Source: Hypanus sabinus (lineage: Eukaryota). Taken from it: a DNA stretch of 64,000 nt. A program made the translations under genes and the position numbers. Below the pieces are notes generated by a model. The model was not told where the DNA came from, did not search any database, and worked only from the letters and a program-made list of their open reading frames with translations. Positions within the stretch are counted from its first letter, which is position 1. Each line of letters starts with the position of its first letter. Positions 4,100 through 61,429 of the stretch are shown here, piece after piece. The stretch lies in the NCBI RefSeq assembly GCF_030144855.1, contig NW_026779273.1:1-64000 (forward strand), read 5' to 3'.

Positions 4100-5000
4100 C
4101 GCCAATCATCGTATCGTTTGCAGACTTACAAACCCATCGATCCGCGATTCCGTTCTTTACCCAGGCGAAGTGGCCGCTTTATTAGAGAGATATACACCAA
4201 TTCGTTAATGCAAATGTCTCATCAGCCAATCGTGTTGCTGCAATTTCAATGCATTAAAGCATGCAGTCATTGTCAACAGCTTCCTTTGCCGTCCAAACCA
4301 GAAATGTGATCTCAGAGACTTTGTCTGTGGAATGATTATTAGTGCCAGTGCCAGAGAGATCGGGTATCTCAGAAACGTTGTCTAGTGTTTACAGAGAATT
4401 CTGCGAAAAAATATTTGGGGGAATAATGTGGGTGAGAATAACCATATATTACAACTGTGGGGTACCGAAGAGCATCTCTGAAAGCACAGTAGATCACGAA
4501 CATTCACTGAGCGGTCATTTTATTAGGTACAGGAGGTCTTCAAACATATGTTCTCATCATTTAATCACATGTCTACACCAGACATAGATGTATGTGCGAG
4601 TTATTAAAATCCGTAAAGCTGCATCCGAAGAGGAAACTTTTACAGGAGCACCGGTACAGTGTAACTTTTGCACGTTGCTGTGTGCCGTTCGATCAGGAAA
4701 ATGTGCAGCGATGCACAGTGTACTGCTGCCCCCAAGTGGCCATAAGCCGGTTCTGCACCTCTTGGTCAAGAGGTGGAAGGTTTTTCTGTGGCCGAAGACT
4801 CGCGCTCTTGATGGCGTGTGAGAAAGTGTAATATTGGACGTTTCAGATGGGGACGGAGGGTGAAAAGTGGATCGGGGGGATGGAGGACGATGCCTGGATT
4901 AAATTTGTGCAGTCACGGACATGCAATGAGTCGTCACATTATTAGGTACAAGAGGTCACCAAACATCGGTTTCCTCATCAATCACAGTTGTATACAATAC
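4100..5000. repeat. Inverted homology block (partner ~61330-62200)
   Basis: For example gcaaatgtctcatcagccaatcgtgttgctgc (~4210) versus gctgcaacacgattggctgatgagacattcgc (~62062); both copies carry the CTCF-like site. Confidence 0.82.
4724..4739 (-). promoter_or_regulatory. Putative CTCF site
   Basis: CCACTTGGGGGCAGCA on the minus strand; inverted homolog at 61414. Confidence 0.65.
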
Positions 5001-5672
5001 ACAGTTGTGTGTACGAGATGTTGGCATGTGTACAGATGCAGCCGGATAGCAAACATGTACAGATGCCCTGGTAGAATATTTACGCGGGACAATGAACAAA
5101 TCTACATGCAATATTTCTGCCCCAAGCAGTGTAAATCCGTGCTGCTCCTCTCTGTGAATACGTGGAGGGATTATTCTGCTGTCCCACTCTGTATTGGACT
5201 ACTCTGTAGGAAAGAGTACGAATTGGACATTTCAGACAGAGACGCTTCATCAGGACTGAGAAGAAGGGGGAGGTGCCTGATTTAAAAGTTGCGGGAGGAG
5301 ACAAAAGCCAGCTGAAAGGTGATAGGTGAAGACAGCTGGGTGGGAAAGAGTAAGTGGTGGAGAGGACAGAATATGATAAAAGAGGATAGTGGACAGAAGG
5401 GGAAAGGGAAGGAGCTAATGGCCGAGGGGAAAGTAATAGGTGTGAAGAAGTAAAAGGTCTGAGTGGATATGGGTGTGGATATAAGAAATCGGTTTATATA
5501 CTATCAGGATGGTGGGTACGAAGACAGAATATAAGAGGTTGCACCTCCACCTTGAGGGCGGTCTCCCCTTGAGACGAGAGGAAGCCATGGACCGACACGT
5601 CGGAACGTGAATCGGAATCGGAATCGAGTGTTGCCCGTTTCTGACAGAAAGGAGCAGACGAACACAGTCCGC

Positions 5673-5688
5673 TGCTGCCGCCTAGAGA
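5673..5688 (-). promoter_or_regulatory. Putative CTCF site beside the V-B RSS
   Basis: TCTCTAGGCGGCAGCA, ~38-39 bp beyond the nonamer. Confidence 0.55.
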
Positions 5689-5726
5689 TACAACAGGAAA
5701 ACTAAAATTCGCTATGATTGGCTGGA

Positions 5727-5765
5727 AGGATTTTTAGTTTGAGATTCGTTATCTGAAGTTCTGTG
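5727..5765 (-). other. 23-RSS of V-B (degenerate nonamer)
   Basis: CACAGAA + 23 bp + AAAAATCCT; spacer nearly identical to that of V-P. Confidence 0.8.
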
Positions 5766-6056
5766 CGCTAGCGCAAGCGCAGTAGTAGACGGCGGAGTGG
5801 GATGCCGATGCATGTCTCAGTTCCAGTTCAAACAGAGTGCTTCTGTGTCTCGTCATGGAGGAATTGGATGTGTAGTTCGTAACCGAACCTTGTCCAGCAG
5901 AATAGAAGATAACATCTATTGTCCGGTGTGATCGCTGTCTGTACCAATACAGATATTGATAGTCCGTATTCAGCACAGTGCAGACGACGGTGAGCGGCTG
6001 TCCCGCACCGATTGACAGGGCCGACTGCGATTGTTCCACATAGGCAGGGAGACTCT
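5766..6056 (-). pseudogene. TRBV: TCR beta-like V segment V-B, open V exon without a recognisable leader exon
   Basis: Acceptor ctgacag| at 6057. Exon reads AYVEQS..C..LYWYRQ..IFYSAGQG..SAVYYCACAS; close paralog of V-O/V-P. No leader with a GT donor between the promoter (~6310) and the V exon. RSS nonamer is degenerate. Confidence 0.85.
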
Positions 6057-7960
6057 CTGTCAGACAGAAATTCGATTCTATTTTGATTTCCCTCAATTGC
6101 ACGCCAAAGGCTAAACTAGACAGAAGGAGGCGAATGGTGTGTTCCAAGACACTATTGTACAATGTGCCATCATCGCGCCATAACCATGATCGAATATTTG
6201 CCAAATGACCTAATGAATGTGCCGAATGAAGCTCAGTATCAGATCTCATGGACGTCTGTCTGGGCGACCTGATAAAGGAACTGTATTCTTGTTGGCTCTG
6301 TAACAATTACGTCACTTCCGTAGCGGAGGCCGTACTTTGGCGCGGTTGACGTTGTTGAGAAAATGATAAGAAGAGCCAAGATGGTTTCATGCAATGCGGA
6401 CGTGTTTGGACAATTCAAGGTGGAACGTATTGCAGGAAAACCTGTTTAAAATAACCGGCTCATCGATCCTTGGAAACCCAAGACGCACCCACCAGAGAGA
6501 TTCCATTTATTTATTTTTGGTTTCTTGAGCGGGTCATCGCTTCCATGCCAGGAAGTACTTGTCCTTCGCCACAACCTGATAGCAAGGCGGGATGTAACCG
6601 TCATGTCCTCTTCAGTGTTGAGGAAAGGGAAGTTATTCACGGTGGTTTCGGCTCCCGAATAATCACAACTCTGAACTATGTCAAAACCAATGCCCTCTCT
6701 TTCAAGATTTTTACAAATCGTTCTCAATATTACTTTTAGTACTCACTTAATTGGTCCTCTACTTCTTTGCTCTGTTTGATTTTGCTCAGTTTGTCTTCTT
6801 TTGCAAACCGATTTTCCGTCTTTCCGTTTAGTTGTTAATTAATCAGGTAATGGAATTAAAACCAATGGGAGATCCTGCAAACACATCTTATTTGCATTCC
6901 ACAACAAGTACTTATCCGGCAAAAAGATTCTTAATGGAGTCCTTCATCAGGTCTTCCAAGTCCCTTCGGACCACAGCGTTTGGAATTTCCTCTCCATTTA
7001 GAAAACTTCCTGAGTTTTTATTTCGGCCGCTGAAGTGCTTGACAATACACTGCCCGATCCTGCCATTTATTCGCCTTTTCACCAACCTGTGTTGTGTCCT
7101 TCTGTAGCCACCGTGTTTCCTTAAAAGTATCTGCCCCTCCACTTACCTTCCGACGGTCCGAAAACTTAACCACAGATCCATCAATTCCGTCATCTAAATC
7201 ATCGAAAGACAACGAATGAAGGAGTGGTCCGAATACAGTCGCCACATGTCATCTGCAGCCAATCAGAAAAGGCTCTCTCTGTATTCTCACTCTTTGTCTC
7301 CCGCCAATCACTCAATGCTGTGTCCACGTGACTCGTTCCTGGAACGCCCTGGGCTCCTGTTAAACATCCTCACACTTGGCCCCTTGTCAACGGCCTTCTG
7401 ACAATTTGTCAATGCAGATTCTTTATTTACAGCAATCCAACAGATTTGCCAGACATGATTTTCACTGCAACAAACCACACCGATTGACACCGATAGGTTC
7501 ATGTGTCTCCAGGTCCCAGGAAACCAAATCATTATCATTGAATTCGGCATCTACCCAACCACTGTGTTCAGTGTGACTGGCCTCTAATTGATGAGATTAG
7601 ATTACAAGCAGCATAGAACATATACAATGCGTTTCGCCGGCACAGTGCGGTCCGTTCCCTCTACCGTCTTTCGCCGACCTTATAATCTGCTCAACAATCA
7701 ATCTACGAATTTCGTATAAATGTAGTCCTTCGTTTTTCCATCACGGGGACGGTTTAGGTTATGTGATTGGAAACTGTGCGTGTCTTCATTCATGTGAATG
7801 CTTAACAAGTGGAGGACATTCACTACAATAGTTCCGCCCCTTCTCTCACTGATTGGTCGCTGGGGGGGCAGCGCCTCACTGTTACACCCTCCTCCCAACC
7901 GCTGATTGACAGACGTCGCTTTTCCTGTTCAGCTGACAGCAGTAACTCTTCTGACGGTGA

Positions 7961-7999
7961 GGTTTTTGTTCAGCTTCTCCGTCACTCTGAGCCGCCGTG
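7961..7999 (-). other. 23-RSS of V-C
   Basis: CACGGCG + 23 bp + ACAAAAACC. Confidence 0.93.
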
Positions 8000-8710
8000 A
8001 ATACTCCAGGCGCAGAAATACACGGCCGACGAATCCGCCTCCAGTTTGTCGGACTTCAGGAAGAACTCTTTCGTCTTCGTTCTCTCCGCCATAAAACCGC
8101 CGACCAATTCCTGCGGCTCCACTGAATCAGATGCGATCGACCGAAACATGTACTCCGGTCGAGATCCAGGGAATTGTCGGTACCAGAACAACACGTTAGT
8201 AGCACTGGTACTATCGGCTACTGTGCATTTCAGGGTCACCTTCTGTCCGGAAGTTCCGGAGAAAGCCGGAGTCTGGAGGATCGTCACTGAGGTCGCGTCT
8301 GGAAAAAGAGACGGGCTTGGCAAAATGCCGTGGATCAACAGGGAGATCCGGCTCAATGTGAAAGGGGAGAAAGTGTGTTCATTGAGGGAAGGGAACTGAA
8401 GCTGGGAAAGCTCGGGAGGAGACGCGGTTCAATAGAGAAGGGGATAAAGAGTGTGCAATGAGGGAAGGAAAGAGAAGGGCTGAAATCAGGAAAGCTCGAG
8501 AGGTGGACGGAATTCAGTGGCGGCGGCGGAGGGGTAACAGTGTGAGGAAGCAAAGGGTCGTAATTATACATAGTAAGTTTCCTAGACTACTGTTGGGTAA
8601 ATCAAATGAAGGGAGTTTGAAAGGAAGGTAGAAACAAAGAAATTAATATCATGTTTTTGTCAACTTTACTCACAGTGGAAAACGAGGATGAAATGCAGAA
8701 TTAGAAACAT
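8000..8710 (-). CDS. TRBV: TCR beta-like V segment V-C, intact
   Basis: Leader 8710-8674 (MFLILHFILVFH, GT donor). V exon 8298-8000 in frame, with C23, FWYRQ and SAVYFCAWS. Confidence 0.93.
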
Positions 8711-12291: not shown

Positions 12292-12307
12292 CAGCGCCAC
12301 CTGTCGG
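12292..12307 (-). promoter_or_regulatory. Putative CTCF site beside the V-D RSS
   Basis: CCGACAGGTGGCGCTG, 41 bp beyond the nonamer. Confidence 0.72.
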
Positions 12308-12348
12308 ACAGGCTCACACCCACGCTCAGACTGACATCAAGCCGGTGA

Positions 12349-12387
12349 GGTTTTTGTTCAGCTCCTCCGTCTGACCCAGTCGCTGTG
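12349..12387 (-). other. 23-RSS of V-D
   Basis: CACAGCG + 23 bp + ACAAAAACC. Confidence 0.94.
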
Positions 12388-12979
12388 ATCACGCCAGACA
12401 CAGAAGTACACGGCTGACGAATTCGCCTCCAAACCGACGGAACTCAGCCTGAAGACGTAGCTGCTCGGCCTCTCTGCGGTAAAGCCGTACAGCGACCCTT
12501 TTGGTTCCACGGTGCCGACATACGTAGAGTAGAACAAGTTCTCCAGCCCCTGTCCCGTGTACTGTCTGTACCAAAACATTCTATCAGCCGGGTTGCTACT
12601 CCCGTCGACAGTACAGTTCAGCGTCACAGCCCGGCCGGTAGGACTGGAGAAAGCTGGAATCTGGCGGATCGTCACCGGGGTCACATCTGAGGAAGAGAGT
12701 GGGAGCAAAAAGAGGTGAATATGCGAACGGCGAGAACGGCCGTCCGAACGAGAGGGTGAGGATTGACTTTGGGGTATTTTCGGGTGGCGGGCGGTATGGC
12801 GAGGTTTCGATGAAGAAAGATCAGAGTGAGGGTGGAAATGTGCAGAGAAAAGCGCAGAATGAGAGAGAAAGGCACAGGACCAGAGGAACTGAGGATTACC
12901 CGGGGGCAAAGAGCGGAAAAAGTATTAGAAAATTTCCCTCACAGTGTAAGGAGATGATCAGTTGGAGAAACAGCAACAT
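12388..12979 (-). CDS. TRBV: TCR beta-like V segment V-D, intact
   Basis: Leader 12979-12943 (MLLFLQLIISLH, GT donor). V exon 12686-12388 in frame: VTLNCTV..FWYRQ..LFYS..FTAERPS..SAVYFCVWRD. Confidence 0.93.
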
Positions 12980-16675: not shown

Positions 16676-16929
16676 TGTATGTTTCTGCCTGTATCTATCT
16701 TCCTGTCGGTCTCCTGAGATGATATCTTCAATATAATTGAACGAACTGCACCTGGACCTTTGATGTCTCTTCTTCACTTAATCGCTACGTCAGAGATGAA
16801 GACAAGTACAGTCAGCGCACCTGAGCCATGAATCTGGTGGTTCAGAACACGTGGTCTTGTGCGATGCCGTGACTGGGTGGCTGAACGGCAGCTGCCAAGA
16901 CAGAAGTCAATGCTGCCGCTTTTGTCGTA

Positions 16930-16945
16930 GAGCGCCCTCTGTTGG
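16930..16945 (-). promoter_or_regulatory. Putative CTCF site
   Basis: CCAACAGAGGGCGCTC; weaker inverted homolog at 52099-52114. Confidence 0.68.
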
Positions 16946-18180
16946 CTTGGAGTTACGGTACTACAGGACCCTGTGTACTTTACTTCTATTTCCTCCCGTT
17001 TACTCAATGCATCCATGAAGCTTCACCATCTGTGTAGCTGTCCGAGTGTGGTAAACGTACCCTCCCCGACTACAAAAGTACTTCTTCCAGCAATACATTC
17101 CGTGTGTCTAACTTTATTGGAGGATAAACAGATGTCCCTCAGTATGAAATTCTGTAATTTGCGGTTAATACTTCCTACCCGCGGAAAATAATGCTGATGC
17201 TTCTCATCTATGATCGGGAGATTTTACAGGCTTCGATACAGTCAGTCCCAGTCAAAATAAATGTATTTTCATAGTACGTATATGGCAACAGAGATAACCT
17301 TGATTTTCATTTACTTGCAGGCATTTAGATGAAGAGGGTTAGGGTTAGGGTTGTTGGGGTTAGTAGTCTATTCTGTCACAGCCCCATCACATTCGGCTGG
17401 ATAATCCCGTAACGGTCGTGACTGCCTCCATTCCACAATTTGCTGTTTCAGGCTTATTCCTATTGCGGCCGCAGGGTGGCACTGTACACAAGAATTTGAC
17501 TTGGGTTTGCCAAGTCCCAGCCGCGGGGTCGCAGACTAAAGCGATTGCTTGCCCTGTTAATCCCATTCTCGAAATCTAAAGCGCTGCTGATGTGTTCGTT
17601 GCCACGTAGCCACTTCTGCTCCGCTGAGTTCGCTGCATTCTGGAGAATTCCGTGCTATACGCTTTCATTTTCCACTACAATAGTCATCCCTGCCGAATTG
17701 CTGGCATGATTATAGCTGGCATGAGGGGAGTTATGAAGTTATTTATTCGAAGTTGCCAGTTGGACCGAAGCGTCTGTTTCAGTAATGCACTAGTAAACGA
17801 CGCTACCATTTACACCTCTCCAACAATAAACATTTGGGCCGAGAGGTCAGCGTTTGTAATACAAATTCTACAACTCTGCTATTCTTAATTCATGAACAAC
17901 AGGGGAAAAAAGCACTCTGGGCCACCTTTTACGAAATTAATCTGTCTTTCTGATAAACGTAATCCGTACCTCCCTGCTTTTAGTCCCATCTGCGCCTCCG
18001 AAAACGGTACGATAACTCAATTTGTGACATTGAAGTTAGCTCGTCGTGTCCAGGACTGAAGGGAAATCTCCCGTTGTCCTGCTGAACTTGGAATTGGGTC
18101 CGGCTTCTCGACTGACTCCCGAATCACAAATGAATTGATCCACACACCATTCAAATTCAAAGCTCCCAGTCTCGCTACTC

Positions 18181-18210
18181 AGTGACGTATGTTTGAGGGG
18201 CGGAGCTTCG
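18181..18210 (+). promoter_or_regulatory. CRE-like decamer plus GC box in the V-E promoter
   Basis: AGTGACGTAT followed by GGGGCGGAGC ~100 bp upstream of the ATG; mirrored at 50865-50893 for V-M. Confidence 0.65.
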
Positions 18211-18291
18211 ACCGTTCACCCTGACAAGTCATTCAAAAGATTGCTCATTCCGAACGCCCTTCCGCTTGGAGGAAACTGTCTAAGTTGAAAG

Positions 18292-18959
18292 ATGTTCGTG
18301 TTATTGGAGCTGCTCATCTGTCTTCACGGTAAAGGACAGCTTGAATTTGCGAGTAGTTTAAGGAAGCAGTTCTATATTTTCCTCTCTGTGCTCCAACACC
18401 TCTTGCACTATATTTGCCCATCGTTTTCTATCGTGGTTTTTGATCACTTTTTGTATCGTTGAGCTGTTTTGCTATTTATCATAGTCCATCCAATTATATT
18501 TATTTTATGCTATTCTGTCTCAATCTCTATATCCTCCCCATCTATTTTTCTTTCCCCATATGCCTCTGCATCCCGCATTTATCTTTCTCCCTCTTTGATC
18601 CCTATCTCCATGATCCGAGTGCACCTGCCTACTGACGTCATTCTCCGCTCCTCTCTTCCCCAGCTGCGAACTCGCAAACTATCCGGCAGTCTCCACCGGC
18701 TTTTTCCGGATCTCCGGGGAACCCGATGGCGCTGTCCTGCAACGTGGAGGGCAGCGGCGATTATTACGTGTACTGGTACCGCCAGTACCCGGGGCAGGGG
18801 CCGCAGTTCATGTTCTACAGCAAAGGTGCTAACATTAAAAATCCAGACGGGGAGGTCGATGGATTTACCCTGCAGGCGCTTAAAAAGAACGAGAACAAAC
18901 TGGTGACCAACAGCCTGCGGGTGAATCACTCGGCCGTGTATTTCTGCGCCTGGAGTCTA
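18292..18959 (+). CDS. TRBV: TCR beta-like V segment V-E, intact; opposite orientation to its neighbours
   Basis: Leader 18292-18328 (MFVLLELLICLH, GT donor). V exon 18664-18959: ALSCNV..YWYRQ..MFYS..SAVYFCAWSL. Confidence 0.94.
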
Positions 18960-18998
18960 CACAGTGACGTGCCGAGAGGGAAGAGCTCGACAAAAACC
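18960..18998 (+). other. 23-RSS of V-E (perfect consensus)
   Basis: CACAGTG + 23 bp + ACAAAAACC. Confidence 0.96.
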
Positions 18999-19037
18999 CC
19001 AGACTGCCTGTAAAAGGCGTGACAGAGCAAGCACACT

Positions 19038-19053
19038 TGGCCCTCTGGTGGCG
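19038..19053 (-). promoter_or_regulatory. Putative CTCF site beside the V-E RSS
   Basis: CGCCACCAGAGGGCCA, 39 bp beyond the nonamer. Confidence 0.72.
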
Positions 19054-20952
19054 TCTTGTGTATCTTTTGTTTTGACAGAGGAAACGCGATGCAGACTGGA
19101 AGCAGAAGGGTTTTGTAACAACGGTGAGAGAGCAGGTGGCCAATCTTCTGGCAAGATGCCAGCTCTTACACAAGCACTGTGACGTCCTGCAGACCCATCA
19201 CTCTCCCACAAGCCCCGGACTGACAACGATTTACGTGAATATGAGGCGGAAAAGAAACAGAGGGTTTTCATTGCACAGACGCACATTTGATTCTTCCCTG
19301 TGACTACGTTTCCGTTACCGGCTGTTTTCCAGACGAGAGGCTCTTCCTGCTTTTAGAATATCCTGTCATTAATGGAACATTTATTGGTAAACCTTCTTTA
19401 TTTGCTTGCGATCGCATTTACAATTTAAATTACCCCTGTGAATTTCACCGTCCATAGTTTCATGTTAGCATTATTTCATCTCACAGGCACGTTACTCCGC
19501 CCTGCTGCCATCGTCCCTGAGAAAGGAGAAACGGTCCCCCTTTCCTTGTCGAGGGCACTGAGTGAAAGGTGCAAGAAGTCGTGATGAAATGAAGGTGGAT
19601 TAGACCAGCGCCGGAATATTGCACACAGCTTGGACAGGAATCGTGTTGCGACAATAGGAAGAGGGAGGAGATATTCATAGGAGTATTTCCTGGATAGGAC
19701 GACTACAGATGCATTGAAGATGGATCGGCCGGGTTTATTTTCACTGGAGCGGCTAACGACATACGGGTGCATAAAATTATAAAGGTCGAACGTAATTTGT
19801 TTGTCATGGATGAGGTTCCATAACTGCAAGGGCCATGTTTGAGCTCAAGAGGGGCACAACTGATGGATAGGGACCGGCAATGGATGTTAAAGACAAGTTT
19901 CTGCATGGACTGAGGAGGACAGCGGTAAGAGGGGCAGAGGAGAGAGAGGACAAAGGCAACAGGAAAATAAAATCAAGATGACCGAATGGAGAGATTGCGA
20001 ATGAAGAGAGGAGTAGGGGGTGTGTAAGAAGAGGCTCGAGAGAGGCTGGGCGTTGGAAATCAGGTACATCAGGTAATGGGTCGTTCTTTGAAACTCTGAT
20101 GGTTTCGTTACTGAGCTGAACACTCGTCATCTCAGAAAACCTCGTGTAAACATGGCCCGGATCTGCTGTCAGGAAAGGATTAACGTCCTCACCAAACAAG
20201 ACAGCCTCATCAAAACAGGTGCTGAATCGACATGGAGATTTTCAGCTCCAGTGCTTCACGTTACAACTGCGCGCCCTGCAGCCTCCGCCGGAAATGCAAC
20301 CGCAAAGTTAACCGTTTGGCCAGAGCGAACGATTCTTACCTCCAGCTAACCCATTGAACTTGAGTGATATTGGAAAGTCCGGAGAAAAGCCGACAAGGTC
20401 ACAGTGGGAACGTGGGGTTTTCGGGGCGGAAACTCCCTCAGCTGCGCCAGTCTGTCCAGTGGTAGATTTAACGACATTCGTTGAAAAATACCGAAGACGA
20501 ATTGAATCTGAAATAACTGAAAGTGGGGTCTTGATGAAGGGTGACGGACTCACTGATTGATGAAAACCGTATGTCTGCGTGTCCGAGTCCGGAGGCGTCC
20601 AGGCGGCTTTCCTTGGATGTCTGAGCAAATGTTATAGGGTAGAGGTTGGGGGGGGGGGAGGTCGGGCTTTACTTGGCTGTGATCTGTTCTGGTTTCTTTT
20701 CTCACTTTTTTGTCCTGTTCTTTTTCGATAGTCTATTGAACATTCTGGGCCGAAATGTGTGGCGACATTTGCGAGCCGACCCCAGCCCGTCCCAGGGTGT
20801 AACGTTTGTTAAAATTCTCAGCGGATTTCACCGCAGAGCCAACCGGCATGAAGAAGCTGACAATGTTTCCCCATCACAGTGCGGTTAAATTTCTGTTATC
20901 AAGAATTGGGCTCAAGTGTTACACTCAGCTCTCCGCTCCATCGGCTGCCTGG

Positions 20953-20991
20953 GGTTTTTGCTCGAGGCCTCTATCTCTGTCAGTCGCCGTG
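20953..20991 (-). other. 23-RSS of V-F
   Basis: CACGGCG + 23 bp + GCAAAAACC. Confidence 0.9.
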
Positions 20992-23105: not shown

Positions 23106-23139
23106 CACCCAGAAGGGAAACGTGCACGACAGTACCCAT

Positions 23140-44406: not shown

Positions 44407-45175
44407 ATGTTTGTGTTCCTCGGACTGATGATCTGGGCCCACGGTAAGCAATTTCCTGCGCCTACAAACTTGATGACCACTTTTGTTCTCATCTTTACCC
44501 TTTCCTTCTTTATATCCTGATCCACTTTTCGCCCGTCTGTGTTCATCTTCTAATTTCTTTCTAAATTAATTATCCTCCTTTTACAATCCGTCCATCTTTC
44601 TCCTGCTACAGACTGCGAGCCTCAGGTTCACTCTTCCTGCCCAAATCTCGTTCTCTTCCTCACTTCCTCCTTGCAGTCTTTGCACCTATATTTTCGTTCA
44701 TAGACGATTTACCCTCTTTCTCAAAATTTCCTTTTAATTCCCTCTATTTTTCTTTATTTCCCAGCTGCTTTTCCATTTCTTTCTAATGTTCCACTGTTTT
44801 TAATCATTTCCTTTCCTCTTACGTTTCCAGAGCTACACTGATCACCTGCTCAACCGACCTCCCCCACACCCCCAGATCTCCACCAGCATCATTAACCGTG
44901 CTCCTCTCCCCGTCTCTTTCCCAAAGGTCAGCTCGCAGACGATCGCCCAGATACCGGCCGTGCTCCCGAGATCCCCCGGCGGGAACGTGACGATGACGTG
45001 CACGGTGAAAGGCACGAGAGCTAGCCCTTACATGTACTGGTACAGACAGCTCCCGGGGAAAGAACTGGAGAACCTGTTTTACTCCGCTGTTGCTGGCGCT
45101 GTCAATTCCTATGAGCCCGTCGACGGTTTCACCGCCAAGAGACCGGACGAAATGACCCTCACTCTGAGGAGTCTA
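44407..45175 (+). pseudogene. TRBV: TCR beta-like V segment V-K, pseudogene
   Basis: Leader 44407-44443 (MFVFLGLMIWAH). In-phase acceptor appears mutated (caa for cag at ~44922-44924). An in-frame ~48-nt deletion removes the F strand and second Cys (TLTLRSL). Confidence 0.9.
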
Positions 45176-45214
45176 CACAGTGGCTCAGAGAGAGGGACAC
45201 TCCCAACAGAAACC
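45176..45214 (+). other. 23-RSS of V-K
   Basis: CACAGTG + 23 bp + ACAGAAACC. Confidence 0.92.
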
Positions 45215-48221: not shown

Positions 48222-48733
48222 AAGCATTTCCCAGCTGACGTGACCCTCGCCTTTCTCACTTTATCCCTGACTCTTCTGGACCATTGTGAGTTTTAATTTG
48301 ACGAATTATTTTCTTAGAGCGGGTCGAATCAGCTGATAGCATCACGGATACAAAGAGGATCCCATATCGTTTCTTTTATAAAACGCGGAATATTATGCCG
48401 TTATCAGCCTCCTGACTGTGAATTATTTTCTCTTGCATACTAATCCAGTACTGGCAGCTGCACCGAGAGTTGTCCAGCTCCCTACCGCGGCGACTATTCG
48501 GCCGGGAGACCATCTCTTTTTTGAGTGCATTGGAGGGAGGCGGCATGAGCAGCTACAATATGTACTGCTACCGGCAATTCGGAAGGAGTCTGGGGTGGTT
48601 CTGCTGCGAGTTCGGCACCTGGTTTGAACTACGGTTCGTCAATAAACTTGAAGTGCAAAGAGCCGCTTCACTCGGCAACTCAACGGCAGCGAGGAGACGG
48701 ATTCGGCTATCTGCTTCTGCGCAGCGTGTCTCG
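48222..48733 (+). pseudogene. TRBV: V segment V-L, pseudogenised inverted paralog of V-G
   Basis: Leader remnant 48222-48285 with ATG>AAG. V exon 48449-48733 has two frameshifts and W41>C. RSS CACGGCG + 23 bp + ACAAAATGC at 48734-48772. Confidence 0.88.
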
Positions 48734-50081
48734 CACGGCGACACACGTCTACGGCCGCCTCAAACAAAATGCTCCACGGGACTCGGCTTATCGCAGCCGT
48801 GCTATCCACTTTCTCCCCTCACCCCGCAGGTGCAGCCAAAACGCATTAACCTGAAAAGCTGCCAGGCGAAAGCAGTATCCATTATCAATCCCTCCGCCGT
48901 CGAGGCCATGTTCGCAACTCGCTACTGCAGTAGGGCAGTAGTTTCAAGAAACGTTGGTTTCACAACGGCACGCTCGTCCGGAGTCACTTTCCAGGATTGT
49001 GAAACTCATTCCTATTGAGTGATGGATTGTCAAGACATTGCACATTGATTTTCATTAATTCTATTGTTTGCTTCGTTGAGAATTGCCCGGCAGTACAGTG
49101 AGCAATATCCGTCATTTGTTATGAATTTACTTTGAAATTTGGATTTTAAGCGCCCGAAGCGATGTTCCCCTTCAGACTTTCCCGCAGTGTGTTTTTTTTT
49201 TAAATTCTGTCACATTTCCAATTTGTCAGCCAGCCAAACAGTTATGGTTGATCAAACCGTGCAGGACCCCAAAAGCCGATCCTTCGCCGATGTTGCGCCG
49301 ACACTTTAACCCATCCCATGTTAAACCTTCTCTCTTACATGCGCACACCTTATACATCTTTCACCTGGTGTTTCTTCCGGGTGTTCCGCTTTCCCATCAG
49401 AGTCAAAAGTAGCGGTTAGGAGGTTAATGAGACATTATAAATTGTCCGGAGGTTAGGGATGCATTAAAATAAATTGGTTTCTGGTCGGCGCGCCTCGGCA
49501 GACAGGACGGGTGTATTCATTCCTGTATCTCTACATGGATACCAAAGAAGACCTGAGTGAATCAAATTCACAAGTTTGACCAAGACGCACTGGACTGTTT
49601 TTGTGGGAGAAAATAATTTTAACATGGAACTATGGACGGCGATATCCAGAGGGGTAATTTTAACTATAAATGCGATCGGAAGCAAAAGTAAAAAAAAAAA
49701 TAACAATTCCAATAATTAAAGGACTTTATAAAGCAAGAACATTCGTTCTGAAAAAAAGCCGGTAACGGAAGCGTGGTCACAGGGAAGAAGCAACTGAGCG
49801 TCTGTACAATGAAATCCCTCTGTTTCTTTTCCACATAATATTCACGTAAATCGTTGTCAGTACGGGGCTTCTGGGAGAGTGCTGACTGTGCGTGACGTCA
49901 CAATGCAGGTGTCGGAGCTGGCATCTTGCCAGAAGATTGCCCATCTGCTCTTTCACCGTTTTTACAAAACCCTTCTGCTTCCAGTCTGCATCGCATTTCC
50001 TCTGTCAAAACAAAAGATAGACAAAACGTCACCACAGGGCCAAGTGTGTTTTCTCTGCCACGTCATTTACATGCGGTCTGG

Positions 50082-50120
50082 GGTTTTTGTCGAGCTCTTC
50101 GCTCTCGGCGCGTCACTGTG
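50082..50120 (-). other. 23-RSS of V-M (perfect consensus)
   Basis: CACAGTG + 23 bp + ACAAAAACC. Confidence 0.96.
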
Positions 50121-50782
50121 TAGACTCCAGGCGCAGAAATACACGGCCGAGTGATTCACCCGCAGGCTGTTGGTCACCAGTTTGTTCTCGTTATCTTTAA
50201 GCGCCTGCAGGGTAAATCCATCGACTTCCCCGTCTGGATTCCTAATGTTAGCACCGCTGCTGTAGAACATGAACTGCGGCCCCTGCCCCGGGTACTGGCG
50301 GTACCAGTGCACGTAATAATCGCCGCTGCCCTCCACGTTGCAGGACAGCGCCATCGGGTTCCCCGGAGATCCGGAAAAAGCCGGTGGAGACTGCCGGATA
50401 GTTTGTGAGTTCGCGGCTGGGGAAGAGAGGAGCAGAGTATAAAGTCAGTAGACAGGTACCTTCGGATCATGGAGACAGGGCGCAAACAGGGAGAAGGATA
50501 AATGCGGGAAGCAGAGGCATAAGGGGAAAAGAGAAAGAGATGGGGAAGGTTTAGAGACAGTGAGAGAATAGAATACAATAAATATAATTGTATGGACAGA
50601 GGTGAGAACTGAATAGCAAATTGCGGAATGATGGGAAAAGCGAGAAAGGAGCGCTAGAGAGTGTTAGTAAAGCATATAGTGCAAGAATTTACGGAACACA
50701 GAAAGGGTAGTGCAGAACTAATCGCAAATTGAAGCTGTAGTTTACCGTGAAGCCAGATCAGCACCTCCAATAACAGGAACAT
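50121..50782 (-). CDS. TRBV: TCR beta-like V segment V-M, intact; inverted paralog of V-E
   Basis: Leader 50782-50746 (MFLLLEVLIWLH). V exon 50416-50121; 10 nt differences from V-E over 296 nt. Confidence 0.94.
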
Positions 50783-52918
50783 TTTTCAACTTGGACAGTT
50801 TCCTCCAAGTGGAAGGGCGTTCGGAACGAACAACCTTTTGAATTCCTTGTCAGAGTGAACGGACGAAGCTCCGCCCCTCAACCATACGTCAGTGAACAGC
50901 GACACTGTGAGCTTTGAGTTTGAATGGTGTCTGGATCAATCCATTTGCAGTTTCGGATGTCAGTCTAGAGGCCGGGCCCCATTCCAAGTTCAGCAGGGCA
51001 ACCGGAGCTGTCCCTTCAGTCCTGGACACCACAATCTATCTTCAGTGTCACAAATTGAGTCATCGTATCGTTTTGGGAGGCGCAGAGGGGAATATAAACA
51101 GAGAGGTACGGATTATGTTCAGCAGAAAGACAGATTAATTTTGTATATGATGGTCCAGAGTGCTTTTCCCGTGTTATTCATGAATTGCAAATAGCGGAGC
51201 AGTAGAATATGCATTACAGACGCTGACCTCTCGGCTCAAATGTTTATGGCTTGAGAGGTGTAGATGGTAGCGTCGTATACTAGTGCATTACTGAAACAGA
51301 CGCTTCGGTCCAACTGGCAACCTCCTACAAGTAACTTCAGAAGTCCCGTCATGCAAGCTATAATCATGCCAGCAATTCGGCAAGGACGACGATTGCACTG
51401 GAAATTGAAAGCGTATAGCACGGGATTCTCCAGCAGGCAGCAAACTCAGCGCGGCAGAAGTGGTTACGTGGCAACGAAACACTTGGATGCGAGTCAGATT
51501 TCGAGAATGGGATTAACAGGGCAAGCAAGCTGTTTACTCTGCGACCCCGCAGCTGGGACTTGGCAAAACCAAAGTCTTGTGTAGAGTGCCACCCTGCGGC
51601 CTCGATAGGAATAACCCTAACACAGCGACTTGTGGAAAGGAGAAAGTCACGACTACTACGGGATTATTCGGCCGAATTTGATGGTGCTGCGACAGAATCG
51701 ACTACTAACCCCACCAACCCTAACCCTAACCTGTCTCTCTGAATGCCCGCAGTTAAGTAACTGTCAAGGTTGCCTATGGAGCCATATACGTACTTTGATA
51801 ATAAATTTATTTTGACAGGGACATTGACTTTATTGTGGCATGTAAAACCTCCCGGAGCATAGACAAGATGCATAATCATTATTTCCCCTGGGTAGGAGGG
51901 ATTAAAATTAGATAATTACATACATCTGTTTATGTTTATGCTCAAATAAAGTCAGATACGCGGAATGAGTTGCTGGTAAAAGTAGTCGAGGAGGGTAAAC
52001 CTACAACATTCGGGCAGGTACAGAGCTGGTAAAGCTTCATGGATGCATCGAGTAAACTGAGGCAAATAGAGTTAAATTACACAGGACCCCGTAGTACCAG
52101 AACAGAGGGCGCTCTAAGAAAAAAGCGTCGGCATTGACTTCTGGTTGGGAAGATGCCGTTCAGCCACCCAGTCACCGCATCACACATGACCGCGTGTTGT
52201 GGACCACCGGATTCATGTCTCACGTACGCTGACTGTACTTGCCTCCATCTCGCACTGAGCTCTCACATGAAGCAGAAACATCAAAGATCCAGGTGCAGTC
52301 TGTGCAATTATATTCAAGATATCATCTCAGGAGACCGATCGAACGATGGATACAGGTAGGCACATCGATCGCAAACCACAGGCAGGTAAGAGACAGATGA
52401 ATAACTCTCTAGATTTGAGATTGTCCGTCAGCGGTTATTCCGTTTTTACGTGAAGTCCAACGCATAAAACATCCATCACGATAAGGTCCTTTGAAATGCT
52501 TCTCCCTGTTTCCAAGCAACGTCTTTCAATGGAGGAGGGGCTGGTGTGCCGTTGTCTGCAATTAAATGAAAGGTGCCATCAAAAGAGACGGACAGAAAGA
52601 CGGATAAAGGTAGAAAATAGGTAGGTTTTACAGGCAGACAACAGGAAGTTAAGAGAGATAATTAACTCTCTAGTTTTAATGGATCGATGAAGGCGACTCG
52701 GAAGTTTAGACCCGGGACCCAATCTCTTCATGGGCTGTGAGAAGTATCGTTCCGTTCCCTGTTTCCGATCATCGCCTTTCAGCGGAGGGAAGGGCCGGTG
52801 AGCCAATCGCAGACAATGTGGTGGGGGGGCTGGAAGTTCACCCTCAGCCTTTAGCAACCGTCTTTCCCCGATTCACCTTCAAGACAGGTTTGACTCGTTG
52901 TCTCTTCATCTCGAGTGA

Positions 52919-53725
52919 ATGATGTTCCTGGTACTATCACTGGCGGCCTTTTTCCATCGTAAGGGAACTTAACAGCTTTTTTATTGATTCATCTTCCCCT
53001 TGCTCTCCTTTTGTCTTTCTCGCATATTCACAGCAACTTTTCGTTTATTTTTTTTCCTTCTTCTTGGACCCCGTCCTTTTAACCTCTCTCCCCCGCTCTC
53101 GCTCTCTCTCCCTCTATCTCTCTCCCTCTGTCTCTTTCTATCTGTCTCCTTTTCTCCNNNNNNNNNNNNNNNNNNNNNNNNNNNNNNNNNNNNNNNNNNN
53201 NNNNNNNNNNNNNNNNNNNNNNNNNNNNNNNNNNNNNNNNNNNNNNNNNNNNNNNNNNNNNNNNNNNNNNNNNNNNNNNNNNNNNNNNNNNNNNNNNNNN
53301 NNNNNNNNNNNNNNNNNNNNNNNNNNNNNNNNNNNNNNNNNNNNCCGTCATGCCGTCTCCCTTTTACTCCATCTCATCTCTGCGTCCGGTGATCTTTATT
53401 GAATAACTTCTTCCCGCGTTCTATTACCAGATGCGAATTCGGAGATTATGCGCCAGACCCCCGCCGTTGTTTCTCAGCCTCTCGGCGAGGCGGTGACACT
53501 CCAATGCATCAGTGAGGACGGCAGAATTTCTCAACTATACTGGACAGGCAGAACCCGGGGAAGGAGCCGCAGAACCTATTCTACACCATGGCTGCTCGAA
53601 GCGTGGCCCAGGACACCGAGGTGGAGGGGTTCACTGCCAACCGGCCGATTAACGGCGCCTTCACTCTGAGCGTCTCTCGCCTGCAGCTGAACCACACGGC
53701 CACATATTTCTGCGCTCGCAGTCTG
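52919..53725 (+). pseudogene. TRBV: TCR beta-like V segment V-N, frameshifted; paralog of V-F
   Basis: Leader 52919-52958 (MMFLVLSLAAFFH). V exon 53431-53725 has a 1-nt deletion after TGG (53543/53544); the rest reads RQNPGKEPQNLFY..ATYFCARSL. RSS CACAGCG + 22 bp + AGAAAAACT at 53726-53763. Confidence 0.9.
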
Positions 53726-54049
53726 CACAGCGACTGACGACGATGGAGGACCCGAGAAAAACTCACCAGGGCAGTTGGTGGCGACATTAATTCACATTGA
53801 AAGCGAATACTTCACAGTCTGAAAGGGAAAATTCAGACAGCGGCACGGCAAAGTCGGAAAGCAGCAAGATGCCGAGAGAAATGATTAGTCCCGTATTCTT
53901 AGATACGTCGGATCCACTTACGGTCGCAAGCCCCGTTGCTTTCTCACGGGCTGTTCTGAACCCCTCTGCCAATTACATACAGGTTGCTGGTTGACCTCAT
54001 GGGTTGGCCTTCATTATCTCCTTTCTGATCCTGAGGATGATCCGAGATT

Positions 54050-57876: not shown

Positions 57877-58402
57877 GTTGAGTTAGGCTGTTCAGCCCAT
57901 CGAGTCTGACCCACCATTCGGCCATGGTCATCGGGTGAGGATCGTACATCACGCCTATTGCACATCGCACAACAGTGCGAATCTCCGGGTTAATCGGAGA
58001 GTGGCCATGGTCTGTCGATAACACCAAACTCTTCCATCTGTCTTGCTTCCGCGCCCTTTGATGATCAATTGAGAGAAATTGGAGTCTAATCTGATTTCTG
58101 TCCCACAGGGATTCTGACCGCCTACGTGGAGCAATCGCCTTCCTCCCTGTCAGTCGCAGAGGGAGAGCCGGCCACTCTCTCGTGTACGCTGCTGAATACG
58201 GGCTATCCAAGTATGTACTGGTACAGACAGCGATCCGGCCGGACAATTGATGTTCTCTTCTATTCTGCTGGGCAAGGTTTAGCTATGAACTACACATCTG
58301 ATTCCTACGCGGCGACAAGACCCAGCGATACACTGTTTAAACTGGAACTGAGGCGGGCATCGTCCTCCCACTCCGCCGTCTACTTCTGCGCTTGTAGTAG
58401 CG
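57250..58402 (+). CDS. TRBV: TCR beta-like V segment V-O, intact
   Basis: Leader 57250-57301 (MMLTARLCIQLIVAVIP, GT donor). V exon 58109-58402: ATLSCTL..MYWYRQ..LFYSAGQG..YAATRPS..SAVYFCACSS. Confidence 0.93.
57822..57872. repeat. (GA)n microsatellite in the V-O intron
   Basis: Perfect dinucleotide run. Confidence 0.96.
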
Positions 58403-58441
58403 CACAGAGCTTGAAGTAAAGGGTCTCTCAGTACAAAAACC
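58403..58441 (+). other. 23-RSS of V-O
   Basis: CACAGAG + 23 bp + ACAAAAACC. Confidence 0.93.
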
Positions 58442-58480
58442 TTCCTGTTTATCACAGGGTTGTTCAGAGTTCATGATACA

Positions 58481-58496
58481 CCACTAGGAGGCAGCA
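58481..58496 (+). promoter_or_regulatory. Putative CTCF site beside the V-O RSS
   Basis: CCACTAGGAGGCAGCA, 39 bp beyond the nonamer. Confidence 0.72.
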
Positions 58497-59584: not shown

Positions 59585-60476
59585 ATGATGGTGCGGAGGA
59601 TTGTTTGCCTCCCGCTGATCGTGGCGATGATTCCAGGTAAGTACAAATCACAGATCTCGGGGAAAGGGTGTGGAACGACGTGTTTCAGCATCGCACGTGG
59701 TTAGACTTGGCAGATCTGGACATGAGGCCGAAGGTTTGATGCCTACCTTGCTACTCAGGAGCCGAATGTGAAAACGCCTTCCCACTGATAAATCCTTGCC
59801 GCGCTGGTCGAACAGACCCGATTGAAATTGCGCGTCTCCTTCGGTTTCGCTAAGCTCGGAAGGGGGTATCGGGATTACTCCGAGGGTGCGTGGGGTTCTG
59901 TGCCAAAATTGAAACAGGACGAAATGAGATTATGCTCAATGACATTTAACCCCGCTTCCTCACTGCGGTTCGAAGAGTCTCATTTTCTCTGAACTAGTGT
60001 GCATCTGTGTCAGGATGGTGTTTAGCGCAAATTTCACGGTGCAGAATAGTGTGAAACATCGGGTTAACCGGAGAGTGGACAGAATATTTTGGGAACGCCA
60101 GACCGTTCCTGCTGTCTAGATCACACGCGAGCTGATCAACAATTAAGGGAAATTGATGACTAACCGATTTTCTGTTTTACAGGGATTCTGACCGTGTTCG
60201 TTGACCAGTCGCCTTCCTCCTTGTCAGTCGGAGAGGGTGAGACGGCCAGCGTCTCGTGTACGCTGCTGAAAACGGACTATACACGAATGTATTGGTACAG
60301 GCAGCGACCCGGCCAGGCAATGGATTGTCTCTTCTATTCTGTTGGACAAGGTTCGGTTAGGAACGACACATCCGATTCCTACACGGCGACAAGACCCAGC
60401 CGCACTCTGTTTAAACTGAAACTGGGACGGTCCTCGGCCTCTCACTCCGCCGTCTACTACTGCGCTTGTAGTAGCG
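59585..60476 (+). CDS. TRBV: TCR beta-like V segment V-P, intact
   Basis: Leader 59585-59636 (MMVRRIVCLPLIVAMIP, GT donor). V exon 60183-60476 in frame, ending SAVYYCACSS. Confidence 0.93.
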
Positions 60477-60515
60477 CACAGAACTTCAGATAACGCGTCT
60501 CCCACTACAAAAACC
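60477..60515 (+). other. 23-RSS of V-P
   Basis: CACAGAA + 23 bp + ACAAAAACC. Confidence 0.93.
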
Positions 60516-60554
60516 TTCCAGCCTGCAGCAGGGAGGTTCAGTGGCCTTGTTGTA

Positions 60555-60570
60555 TCAGTAGGTGGCAGCA
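60555..60570 (+). promoter_or_regulatory. Putative CTCF site beside the V-P RSS
   Basis: TCAGTAGGTGGCAGCA, 39 bp beyond the nonamer. Confidence 0.68.
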
Positions 60571-61413
60571 ACAGACCGCGTTCGGCTGCTACTTTCTGTC
60601 ACGAACGGTCTGCACTCGGCTGCATTTCCGCGCATGCGCTTGCTATCTCGGATTTGACGGCAGGAAACCGGAGAGGGCCCTGCGCACAGCTCAGCACATC
60701 GCTCAAACGTCCCCTCTGTCCGTACACATCGTTACCTCAGTAAAGGAGCCGATGATAATGAAGGCTCCAGTCACCAATCCAGCAGGATATCTGCCTTCGT
60801 TCCCCTACTCTTATGCTCGAGGATGGGACAATAATGTGGATTCTCGACTTCACAATCCACCTCTCTGTAGTCCTGTTCACCCTCACTGCGGTTTTCTCTG
60901 GTGGTTTTAAACATTTTTGCTGAAACTTATTCTTCACCAGTACACTGTGATCTGCATGCAAGACCAGCTTTTCACTGTAACTCCAGCGAGGCAGCACGTG
61001 TAAACATATTCATTAATTTATCTTTCTCTATTTCAATTCAAAATGTTATGAATTGATCTCTGCGACAAGTTTTTCACCGCATAACTGCACAGGAATTCTC
61101 TGGGGCCAAACATTGTAATTCCAAATCCCTATCACTATACTCTATCAGTCCAGCCTTTGACCTTTCCTTTCAATCTGACTTCACCTATCACATTCCAGCT
61201 GTCCTTTAACTCATCCCGCAACTTTTATTTCAGGCATCGTTCTCCAACCCCCTTCCCGTGCACTTTTCACTCTCAGTCCTGATAAACGGTCTCGGCCGGA
61301 AGCATACGATGTTACACTTTACTATAAGGCCATCAAGAGCGCTGGAGCACTAGTTTCCGGCCACAGTAAAAACTTTCCACCTATTCACCAAAAGATGTGG
61401 AATCGGCCTTTAG

Positions 61414-61429
61414 CCACTTGGGGGCATCA
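61414..61429 (+). promoter_or_regulatory. Putative CTCF site
   Basis: CCACTTGGGGGCATCA; mirror of the 4724 site. Confidence 0.6.

What the first reader, a model, noticed from the sequence alone, without database searches (positions are those of the whole stretch)
4724..61429. CTCF-like motifs are strictly divergent: minus in the left arm, plus in the right arm
Motifs seen at 4724, 5673, 12292, 16930, 19038 and 23091 all lie on the minus strand. Those at 25896, 52099, 53771, 54050, 58481, 60555 and 61414 all lie on the plus strand. The site next to plus-strand V-E follows its arm's orientation, not the gene's. In mammalian antigen-receptor loci, V-region CTCF sites generally point toward the D-J recombination centre, in line with loop extrusion. 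Applied here, this predicts an insulating switch at ~23.1-25.9 kb and a recombination centre on each side.
Basis: partly seen in the sequence, partly recalled or inferred. Interest (0 to 1): 0.8.

Follow-up and report, generated by a model that had tools for sequence, protein, structure and literature searches.

The report
CTCF-like motifs follow mirrored V genes
In this T-cell-receptor beta V-gene cluster of a ray, CTCF-like motifs do lean to opposite strands in the two halves. They do so mainly because they are built into V-gene units that were duplicated as mirror images, not because of a separate, strict chromatin-loop code.

Summary
All 13 listed motifs exist at the stated places and strands, but their strength is uneven: 52099 scores -1.7 bits, 5673 7.4 and 53771 9.0 against a CTCF matrix.

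An unbiased scan shows a real strand-by-arm bias that is not strict.
- At p<1e-5: left arm 6 minus / 1 plus, right arm 0 minus / 4 plus (Fisher 0.015).
- At p<1e-4: about 12/2 against 6/12.
- Omitted opposite-strand sites: 17466+ (14.7 bits), 51584- (12.2), 26442- (12.7), 26161- (11.8).

The 17 TCR-beta-like V segments diverge in the same way: left 6 minus / 1 plus, right 9 plus / 1 minus. The switch lies at 25.1-27.1 kb, inside one contig. A tree pairs V genes across the arms, so the arms are an old inverted duplication (70-83% identity).

Several of the best motifs sit 36-38 nt behind a V recombination-signal (RSS) nonamer, co-oriented with the V. All four strong right-arm sites belong to one such paralogous family.

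The single "arm, not gene" case (19038) is a degenerate quasi-palindrome that is lost in its mirror copy.

No D, J or C segment lies in the window, so recombination centres on both sides remain untested. They are plausible, because salmonid and pike TRB loci have that layout.

First readers noted the RSS-linked motif on other pieces of this genome; those notes are unchecked.

The parts
470..757 (-). V segment V01 (TCR-beta-like), left arm
   Evidence: tblastn; RSS CACGGCG-23-ACAAAAACC, no CTCF-like motif behind it
5752..6078 (-). V02 (CACAS family), left arm
   Evidence: Pfam V-set 7e-11; sits in the clade of V15/V16/V17
7961..8338 (-). V03 (CAWS type), left arm
   Evidence: no motif behind its RSS
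12349..12699 (-). V04, left arm, RSS CACAGCG-23-ACAAAAACC
18651..19010 (+).
   Evidence: V-set 2e-12; sister of V13
20929..21304 (-). V06, left arm
   Evidence: sister of V14
24733..25080 (-). V07: innermost left-arm V, in the same contig as V08
   Evidence: V-set; sister of V12
25081..27154 (.). Head-to-head switch zone between V07 (-) and V08 (+); holds weak CTCF-like sites 25893+ (11.3), 26161- (11.8) and 26442- (12.7)
   Evidence: lies inside contig 24415-27932
27155..27457 (+). V08: innermost right-arm V
37199..37444 (+). V09: decayed V of the CACSS family with a degenerate RSS
40521..40919 (+). V10, right arm
44903..45214 (+). V11 (V relic with RSS at 45176)
48430..48765 (+). V12: mirror partner of V07
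50070..50429 (-). V13: the one minus-strand V of the right arm; mirror copy of V05 with an identical consensus RSS at 50120
53421..53761 (+). V14: mirror partner of V06; starts 77 bp after gap 53158-53344
58090..58416 (+). V15 (CACSS family)
   Evidence: best single-domain PDB matches are TCR beta V domains
60164..60490 (+). V16 (CACSS family)
63737..64000 (+). V17 (CACSS family), cut by the window end
4724..4742 (-). Strongest CTCF-like site (19.5 bits), 36 nt behind a relic nonamer AGAAAAACC; mirror partner of 61411
5673..5691 (-). Weak (7.4 bits) RSS-flank motif of V02, V-sense, 36 nt after the nonamer
12292..12310 (-). RSS-flank motif of V04 (16.7 bits), V-sense, 38 nt after the nonamer; flank not alignable with the CACSS family
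16930..16948 (-). Intergenic CTCF-like site (17.3 bits) in a ~100-bp element also found at 23090 and 52096
17466..17484 (+). Omitted opposite-strand site (14.7 bits), 1.2 kb upstream of V05 and co-oriented with it; partner 51584-
19036..19054 (-). Quasi-palindromic site 37 nt behind the V05 RSS (12.0 bits antisense, 2.6 sense); lost in the V13 copy
23090..23108 (-). Diverged direct copy of the 16930 element (13.8 bits)
37558..37576 (+). Motif of the GGCAGCA family (14.9 bits) behind V09 relic
51584..51602 (-). Omitted opposite-strand site (12.2 bits), co-oriented with V13; 17 of 19 bases identical to 17466
52096..52114 (+).
58478..58496 (+). RSS-flank motif of V15 (16.8 bits), V-sense, 36 nt after the nonamer
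60552..60570 (+). RSS-flank motif of V16 (14.3 bits), V-sense, 36 nt after the nonamer
61411..61429 (+). Relic RSS-flank motif (14.7 bits); mirror partner of 4724
16679..19485 (.). Left copy of the 2.8-kb inverted duplication (83% identical to 52365-49602), carrying V05 and three motif sites
49602..52365 (.). Right copy of that inverted duplication, carrying V13
4103..6140 (.). Left copy of the inverted block V02 + RSS motif + relic motif (about 73% identical to 62201-60140)
60140..62201 (.). Right copy of that block, carrying V16 and the motifs at 60552 and 61411
32728..34014 (+). hAT-type (GTF2IRD2-like) transposase ORF in the transposon-rich centre

Best explanation
The window is part of a TCR-beta-type V-gene cluster of a ray. 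It is built as two head-to-head V arrays: the left is transcribed leftward and the right rightward. The arrays arose by an old inverted segmental duplication, followed by local tandem duplications.

Most CTCF-like motifs are parts of the duplicated V units, so they flipped strand together with the genes.
- The clearest class is a motif 36-38 nt behind the RSS nonamer (core at +39 to +41), co-oriented with the V.
- It occurs in the CACSS family (V02, V15, V16, relic V09, and relics at 4724 and 61411) and independently behind V04.
- A few look-alikes are coded inside V exons.

The strand-by-arm bias is therefore a by-product of V-unit orientation.

Inference, not shown: the RSS-flank motifs are real CTCF-binding elements that stall cohesin and present the adjacent RSS to a recombination centre lying downstream of each array, as at mouse proximal VH genes.
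For: Shown.
- 17 V segments, left 6-/1+ and right 9+/1-. They are V-set domains and closest to TCR beta V domains.
- Inverted blocks 4103-6140/62201-60140, 16679-19485/52365-49602 and 24729-25599/48769-47894 at 70-83% identity.
- Cross-arm sister pairs V05-V13, V06-V14, V07-V12 and V02 with V15-17, with 100% bootstrap.
- V-sense motifs at a fixed 36-38 nt behind the nonamer in V04, V15, V16 and V02; relics carry the same nonamer-to-motif spacing at 4724 and 61411.
- All four right-arm sites at p<1e-5 belong to that one family.
- V-exon look-alikes at 665, 8231 and 40652.
- No base-composition skew that could bias the strands.
- Motifs are enriched over shuffles even after collapsing paralogs: 9 lineages against 2.2 expected, Poisson 5e-4.

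Context.
- Skates have a CTCF orientation code (PMC10115646).
- Mouse Igh has CTCF sites within 100 bp of the RSS (PMC5859386).
- The hAT transposase ORF is 96% identical to a Hypanus sabinus protein.
Against: - Only 3 of about 16 V segments carry a strong RSS-flank motif, so the module is family-specific here, not general.
- Intergenic sites with no detectable V link (1661, 2980, 5542, 16930/23090, 54047) also lean to the arm's strand. After collapsing paralogs that is 5 lineages to 1, p=0.22: too few to tell, but not excluded as a real arm-level signal.
- Constraint on the motifs is weak within the window. In the 83% block, 16930 and 19036 are degraded in the mirror copy, and the conservation of 4724/61411 (17 of 19) is not significant on its own.
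- No occupancy data exist.
Confidence: 0.7

Rival explanations
1. CTCF sites form an arm-level orientation code that is independent of gene orientation, with an insulating boundary at about 23-26 kb and a D-J-C recombination centre beyond each end of the window. Sites near inverted V genes obey the arm.
For: - Significant strand-by-arm bias.
- 18 of 19 IUPAC matches follow the arm.
- 19036- and 16930- near plus-strand V05 follow the arm.
- In mouse Igh and Tcrb all V-region sites share one orientation (PMC5859386, PMC10772921).
- Head-to-head TRB loci with V genes in the middle exist in pike and salmonids (PMC10464911).
Against: - Opposite-strand sites of equal strength exist (17466+, 51584-, 26442-, 26161-).
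- 17466+/51584- is the best-conserved pair in the V05/V13 block, and it follows the gene.
- 19036 is quasi-palindromic, homologous in register to sense motifs, and lost in the mirror copy.
- 52099 is not a match.
- The switch zone reads +,-,-.
- After removing V-linked and paralogous sites the remaining bias is not significant (5:1, p=0.22).
- No D or J in the window.
Confidence: 0.15
2. Look-alikes without function. The motif-like strings are neutral passengers of duplicated V-gene flanks and G-rich low-complexity DNA. CTCF does not bind them, and the fixed spacing merely reflects shared ancestry of the V flanks.
For: - Most strong sites fall into two paralogous families.
- Mirror copies of 16930 and 19036 have decayed at about the neutral rate.
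- 2980 and 26161 lie in purine-rich tracts.
- Most V genes with good RSSs have no motif.
Against: - V04's flank is not alignable with the CACSS-family flank, yet it carries a 16.7-bit motif at the same spacing and orientation. The chance of that is about 3e-5.
- Within the family, the positions that stay invariant are the high-information positions of the CTCF matrix, and the variable one (position 12) is a low-information position. This is partly circular, because the sites were chosen by score.
- First readers noted the same +39-40 spacing at other TCR-beta V genes of this genome (unchecked notes).
Confidence: 0.25
3. Scaffolding artefact. One of the large contigs is placed in the wrong orientation across an N gap, so the two 'arms' are really one co-oriented V array.
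For: - Gaps at 24275-24414 and 27933-28161 separate the three contigs that define the arms.
- Nothing in the window spans them.
Against: - Contig 24415-27932 itself holds a head-to-head V pair, V07 minus and V08 plus. Its ends match the orientation of the neighbouring contigs.
- Each big contig also holds one internally inverted V (V05, V13), so inversions are real here.
- The arms are 70-83% identical paralogs, not collapsed copies.
Confidence: 0.07

Closest known systems
RSS-adjacent CTCF-binding elements of mouse proximal VH genes (Igh)
   Same: The motif lies within 100 bp downstream of the V RSS, is co-oriented with the V, and so points to where a downstream recombination centre would be (PMC5859386 table 2; PMC10293834).
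   Different: - This is a TCR-beta-type locus of a ray.
- The spacing is about 39-41 bp after the nonamer.
- Only some V families carry it.
- Binding is untested.
Mouse Tcrb V-region CBEs
   Same: Same receptor chain. All 18 V-region sites share one orientation, convergent with the sites flanking D-J (PMC10772921, PMC5859386).
   Different: In mouse most sites are at or near V promoters and only 2 are near an RSS. Here the clearest ones are behind the RSS, and the cluster has two opposed arrays.
Head-to-head duplicated TRB loci of pike and salmonids, [C-J-D-V]-[V-D-J-C]
   Same: Two V arrays in opposite orientation with the V genes in the middle, produced by inverted duplication (PMC10464911).
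   Different: - D-J-C clusters are not visible in this window, so the full layout is unproven.
- The lineage is cartilaginous fish, so it would be an independent origin.
- The arm copies are much more diverged (70-83%).
Divergent CTCF motifs at TAD boundaries, including in the little skate
   Same: Minus-strand motifs on the left and plus-strand motifs on the right of a point, as at insulation minima (PMC10115646).
   Different: The switch zone here holds only weak sites in the order +,-,-. No Hi-C data are available.

Membership tests
CTCF-binding element (CBE) | Sequence match to the vertebrate CTCF matrix at p<1e-5 | tested here: met
11 sites reach >=12.94 bits.
CTCF-binding element (CBE) | Occupancy by CTCF and cohesin in the relevant cells | not testable with these tools
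   No ChIP, CUT&RUN or ATAC data are reachable. The sequencing-run search gave only small-share holders.
CTCF-binding element (CBE) | Purifying selection on the motif relative to its flanks | tested here: inconclusive
   - The 3' half is invariant in the CACSS family, and the spacing is shared with the unrelated V04 flank.
- But 16930 and 19036 are degraded in their 83%-identical mirror copies.
V-region CBE array convergent with a recombination centre (mouse Igh/Tcrb type) | V-region sites share one orientation relative to the V genes | tested here: inconclusive
   RSS-flank sites: 7 V-sense against 1 antisense (19036). Other sites are mixed (16930 antisense and 17466 sense relative to V05).
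V-region CBE array convergent with a recombination centre (mouse Igh/Tcrb type) | Oppositely oriented CBEs flanking a D-J-C recombination centre | not testable with these tools
   No D-like or J-like segment in the window.
Head-to-head duplicated TRB loci [C-J-D-V]-[V-D-J-C] | Two V arrays in opposite transcriptional orientation, back to back | tested here: met
   Left 6-/1+, right 9+/1-, with the switch at 25081-27154 inside one contig.
Head-to-head duplicated TRB loci [C-J-D-V]-[V-D-J-C] | The arms are paralogous mirror copies | tested here: met
   Inverted alignments and cross-arm sister pairs with 100% support. The order is only partly mirrored: V06 and V05 are swapped relative to V13 and V14.
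Head-to-head duplicated TRB loci [C-J-D-V]-[V-D-J-C] | A D-J-C cluster at the outer end of each arm | not testable with these tools
   Lies outside the window.

The most novel reading that the evidence does not exclude
The RSS-flank motifs (core 39-41 bp after the nonamer, V-sense) are true CTCF/cohesin anchors in a ray TCR-beta locus. If so, the 'RSS plus CBE' design known from mouse proximal VH genes, and with it loop-extrusion-guided presentation of V segments to RAG, would date back to the common ancestor of jawed vertebrates. Two mirrored V arrays would each feed their own recombination centre.
Probability: 0.35. Interest if true: 0.7.

Novelty: new member of a known kind. Interest (0 to 1): 0.4.

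Why it matters
If the RSS-adjacent motifs bind CTCF, they would show that coupling V-segment recombination signals to loop-extrusion anchors is ancient rather than a mammalian Igh speciality. They would also give a compact, testable locus in a cartilaginous fish.

The specific claim of a strict, gene-independent divergent code matters less. The pattern is what an inverted duplication of V units carrying an oriented motif must produce. Counting 13 sites as 13 observations overstates the evidence.

Tried and rejected
- Base-composition skew as the cause of the strand bias: GC and AT skew per arm are within about +/-0.04. Rejected.
- Pure chance: rejected by shuffles.
- D, J or recombination-centre elements inside the window: none found.
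- Testing gap continuity with paralogous alignments: no alignment spans any gap.
- Identifying the organism:
  - A word-based homolog search with a V exon found nothing.
  - The protein atlas reached only 'Chordata'.
  - Sequencing-run names are coded and shares are small.
  - Exact-protein look-up of the transposase ORF found nothing.
  - The transposase homolog search finally pointed to stingrays. This is a transposon, so it is a soft indicator.
- A PDB search with V05 was swamped by multi-domain antibody constructs. V15 gave clean TCR-beta hits.
- Literature search for CTCF plus RSS in sharks: nothing relevant.
- Treating the correlation between motif conservation and matrix information content (rho 0.59) as evidence of binding: kept only as a hint, because the sites were selected by that matrix.
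Full report
**What the window is**

The window has 46.7% G+C, a CpG observed/expected ratio of about 0.8, and seven N gaps.
- A pattern search plus tblastn with the window's own V exons finds 17 V segments or relics. They are Pfam V-set domains.
- Most carry 23-bp-spacer RSSs, often with the consensus nonamer ACAAAAACC.
- They end in YFCAWS- or YYCACSS-type sequences. For V15 the best single-domain matches among solved structures are TCR beta V domains.
- No D-like or J-like element is present.
- The centre (about 28-47 kb) is rich in transposons. A hAT-type transposase ORF at 32728-34014 is 96% identical to a protein of the stingray Hypanus sabinus and 92% identical to one of Hemitrygon akajei.
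- That fits earlier notes calling this genome a shark or ray. Because the ORF is a transposon, it is a soft indicator.

**The observation**

I scanned both strands with a CTCF matrix of the JASPAR MA0139.1 type. Its column sums of about 910 and its consensus TGGCCACCAGGGGGCGCTA are as expected, and an independent IUPAC search agrees on the top sites.

Their quality is uneven.

| Site | Strand | Bits |
|---|---|---|
| 4724 | - | 19.5 |
| 16930 | - | 17.3 |
| 58481 | + | 16.8 |
| 12292 | - | 16.7 |
| 61414 | + | 14.7 |
| 60555 | + | 14.3 |
| 23091 | - | 13.8 |
| 19038 | - | 12.0 |
| 54050 | + | 11.5 |
| 25896 | + | 11.3 |
| 53771 | + | 9.0 |
| 5673 | - | 7.4 |
| 52099 | + | -1.7 |

The p<1e-4 and p<1e-5 thresholds are 8.0 and 12.9 bits.

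Motifs are enriched: 14 sites at >=12 bits against 2.2 in dinucleotide shuffles, with 0 of 200 shuffles reaching that number.

**Not strict, but biased**

- Opposite-strand sites: 17466+ (14.7 bits) in the left arm; 51584- (12.2), 26442- (12.7) and 26161- (11.8) in the right arm.
- Same-strand sites: 1661-, 2980-, 5542- and 37558+.

Strand by arm:

| Threshold | Left arm (-/+) | Right arm (-/+) | Fisher p |
|---|---|---|---|
| p<1e-5 | 6/1 | 0/4 | 0.015 |
| p<1e-4 | 12/2 | 6/12 | 0.0045 |

So 8 of 32 sites at p<1e-4 are on the 'wrong' strand. Base composition does not explain the bias: skews are within about +/-0.04.

**What explains the bias**

1. The V genes diverge in the same way.
   - The left arm has six minus-strand V genes and one plus-strand V (V05, 18651-19010).
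   - The right arm has nine plus-strand V genes and one minus-strand V (V13, 50070-50429).
   - The switch lies between V07 (24733-25080, minus) and V08 (27155-27457, plus).
2. The arms are mirrored paralogs.
   - Self-BLAST finds these inverted blocks:

   | Left block | Right block | Identity |
   |---|---|---|
   | 4103-6140 | 62201-60140 | about 73% |
   | 16679-19485 | 52365-49602 | 83% |
   | 24729-25599 | 48769-47894 | 70% |
   | 20956-21299 | 53761-53423 | 73% |

   - An ML tree of the V exons gives cross-arm sister pairs V05-V13, V06-V14 and V07-V12, and places V02 inside the V15/V16/V17 clade. All four have 100% bootstrap.
3. The motifs sit inside those units.
   - 4724 pairs with 61411.
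   - 5673 pairs with 60552 and 58478.
   - 16930 pairs with 52096.
   - 17466 pairs with 51584.
   - 23090 is a diverged direct copy of the 16930 element.
   - Some weak hits are coding sequence of V exons (665, 8231, 40652).

The 13 sites therefore reduce to about seven lineages. All four right-arm sites at p<1e-5 (37558, 58478, 60552, 61411) belong to one family ending in GGCAGCA or GGCATCA.

**The RSS-flank module**

For each V I located the RSS and the best motif behind it.
- V04 has a 16.7-bit, V-sense motif starting 38 nt after the nonamer.
- V15 (16.8 bits), V16 (14.3) and V02 (7.4) have one at 36 nt.
- The strong sites 4724 and 61411 have no recognisable V exon. They do keep a nonamer-like AGAAAAACC (or AGTAAAAAC), followed by TTCC and the same 36-nt spacing, and their downstream flank is homologous to that of V02 and V16. 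I read them as relics of the same module.
- V09, a decayed member of the family, keeps the motif at 37558.
- The flank of V04 is not alignable with the CACSS-family flank, yet motif, spacing and orientation coincide. By chance this would be about 3e-5.
- Within the aligned sites, positions 5, 10, 11, 13, 14 and 15 are invariant, and position 12, a weak position of the matrix, is the most variable. This is suggestive but partly circular.
- Most V genes here (V01, V03, V06-V08, V10-V14) have no such motif, so the module is family-specific in this window.
- First readers noted a motif 39-40 bp after the nonamer at other TCR-beta V genes of this genome. Those notes are unchecked and I do not count them as evidence.

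**'Arm, not gene'**

The only place where the two rules differ is the V05/V13 block.
- Behind the V05 RSS, at the usual distance (37 nt), the matrix prefers the antisense reading (12.0 against 2.6 bits).
- In the alignment of V flanks, the sense strand of V05 (GGCCCTCTGGTGGCG) lines up in register with the sense motifs of the other V genes (CCGACAGGTGGCG in V04).
- It differs mainly by an A-to-T change at the strongly weighted position 9. That change happens to complete a reverse-strand match, so the site is a quasi-palindrome.
- In the mirror copy V13 the site is lost in both readings (best 4.4 bits).
- 16930- follows the arm but is degraded in its mirror copy, which lacks 11 bp in the 5' half.
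- 17466+/51584- is conserved at 17 of 19 bases in both copies. It lies about 1.2 kb upstream of V05 and V13 and follows the gene.

The block therefore gives no verdict.

Sites without a detectable V link, after collapsing paralogs, lean to the arm 5:1 (p=0.22). That is too few to decide.

**The switch and the gaps**

By V orientation it lies at 25081-27154.
- The weak sites in that zone read +, -, - (25893, 26161, 26442), not a clean change.
- The zone lies wholly inside contig 24415-27932, so a gap does not create the head-to-head junction.
- No motif lies in a gap; the closest, 53768, is about 420 bp from one. No call depends on continuity across a gap.
- No paralogous alignment spans a gap, so contig order and orientation remain as the assembler set them. 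Gap 53158-53344 follows a GA-type simple repeat.
- I did not try to fill or look up gap letters.

**Comparison with what is known**

- In mouse, all V-region CTCF sites of Igh and Tcrb share one orientation, convergent with the sites flanking D-J.
- In mouse Igh many proximal VH genes have the site within 100 bp of the RSS. In mouse Tcrb most sites are near promoters and only two are near an RSS (PMC5859386, PMC10772921).
- In mouse Igk, where half of the V genes are inverted, CTCF orientation does not follow gene orientation (PMC5859386).
- Skates have the CTCF orientation code at TAD boundaries (PMC10115646).
- I found no paper on CTCF motifs at RSSs in cartilaginous fish.

**Verdict**

The divergent pattern is real but not strict, and it is best explained as inheritance of an oriented, V-linked motif through an inverted duplication of V units. 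The open question worth pursuing is whether the RSS-flank motif is a working CTCF anchor in a ray.

Noticed in passing
window 32728-34014 (+); RT fragment at 34947-35639: An intact-looking 428-aa hAT-type (GTF2IRD2-like, DUF4371) transposase ORF, 96% identical to a Hypanus sabinus protein. Similar proteins at 80-86% identity occur in snakes, salamanders, teleosts and a tunicate, so this is a widely and probably horizontally spread transposon family. It sits in the transposon-rich centre between the two V arms.
   Followed up: partly
window 18930-18998 (+) and 50150-50082 (-): V05 and V13 keep the last 30 coding bases and both RSS signals (CACAGTG and ACAAAAACC) identical; the 23-nt spacer differs at 2 bases. 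Their 2.8-kb block is 83% identical, against about 70-75% for the other mirrored blocks. That suggests a later duplication or gene conversion of the one V that is inverted in each arm.
   Followed up: partly
window 16850-17030 (-), 23010-23190 (-), 52015-52195 (+): A non-coding element of about 100 bp is present in three copies. It has a CTCF-like core (A[AG]CAG[AG]GGGCG[CT]TCTA) and an invariant TTGACTTCTG about 30 nt downstream, even in the copy whose flanks no longer align. Its function is unknown.
   Followed up: partly
window 665-683, 8231-8249 (-), 40652-40670 (+): V-exon coding sequence itself gives CTCF-matrix hits of 8-10 bits (codons for G-Q/R-K-V-T-L and W-Y-R-Q-R-A-G). Any strand-aware motif scan in V clusters will pick these up with the gene's orientation.
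   Followed up: yes
window 53084-53156; also 57815-57875, 58778-58833, 13263-13360: GA-type simple repeats. One abuts the assembly gap at 53158-53344 and probably caused it.
   Followed up: no
window 4690-4880 (-) and 61224-61654 (+): Relic RSS (CACACGC, 23-24 nt spacer, ACAGAAAAA) with no recognisable V exon upstream, yet with the best CTCF-like motif of the window behind it. The motif seems to have outlived the gene in both mirror copies.
   Followed up: partly
Its mirror partner V12 is only about 39% identical in protein.
   Followed up: no
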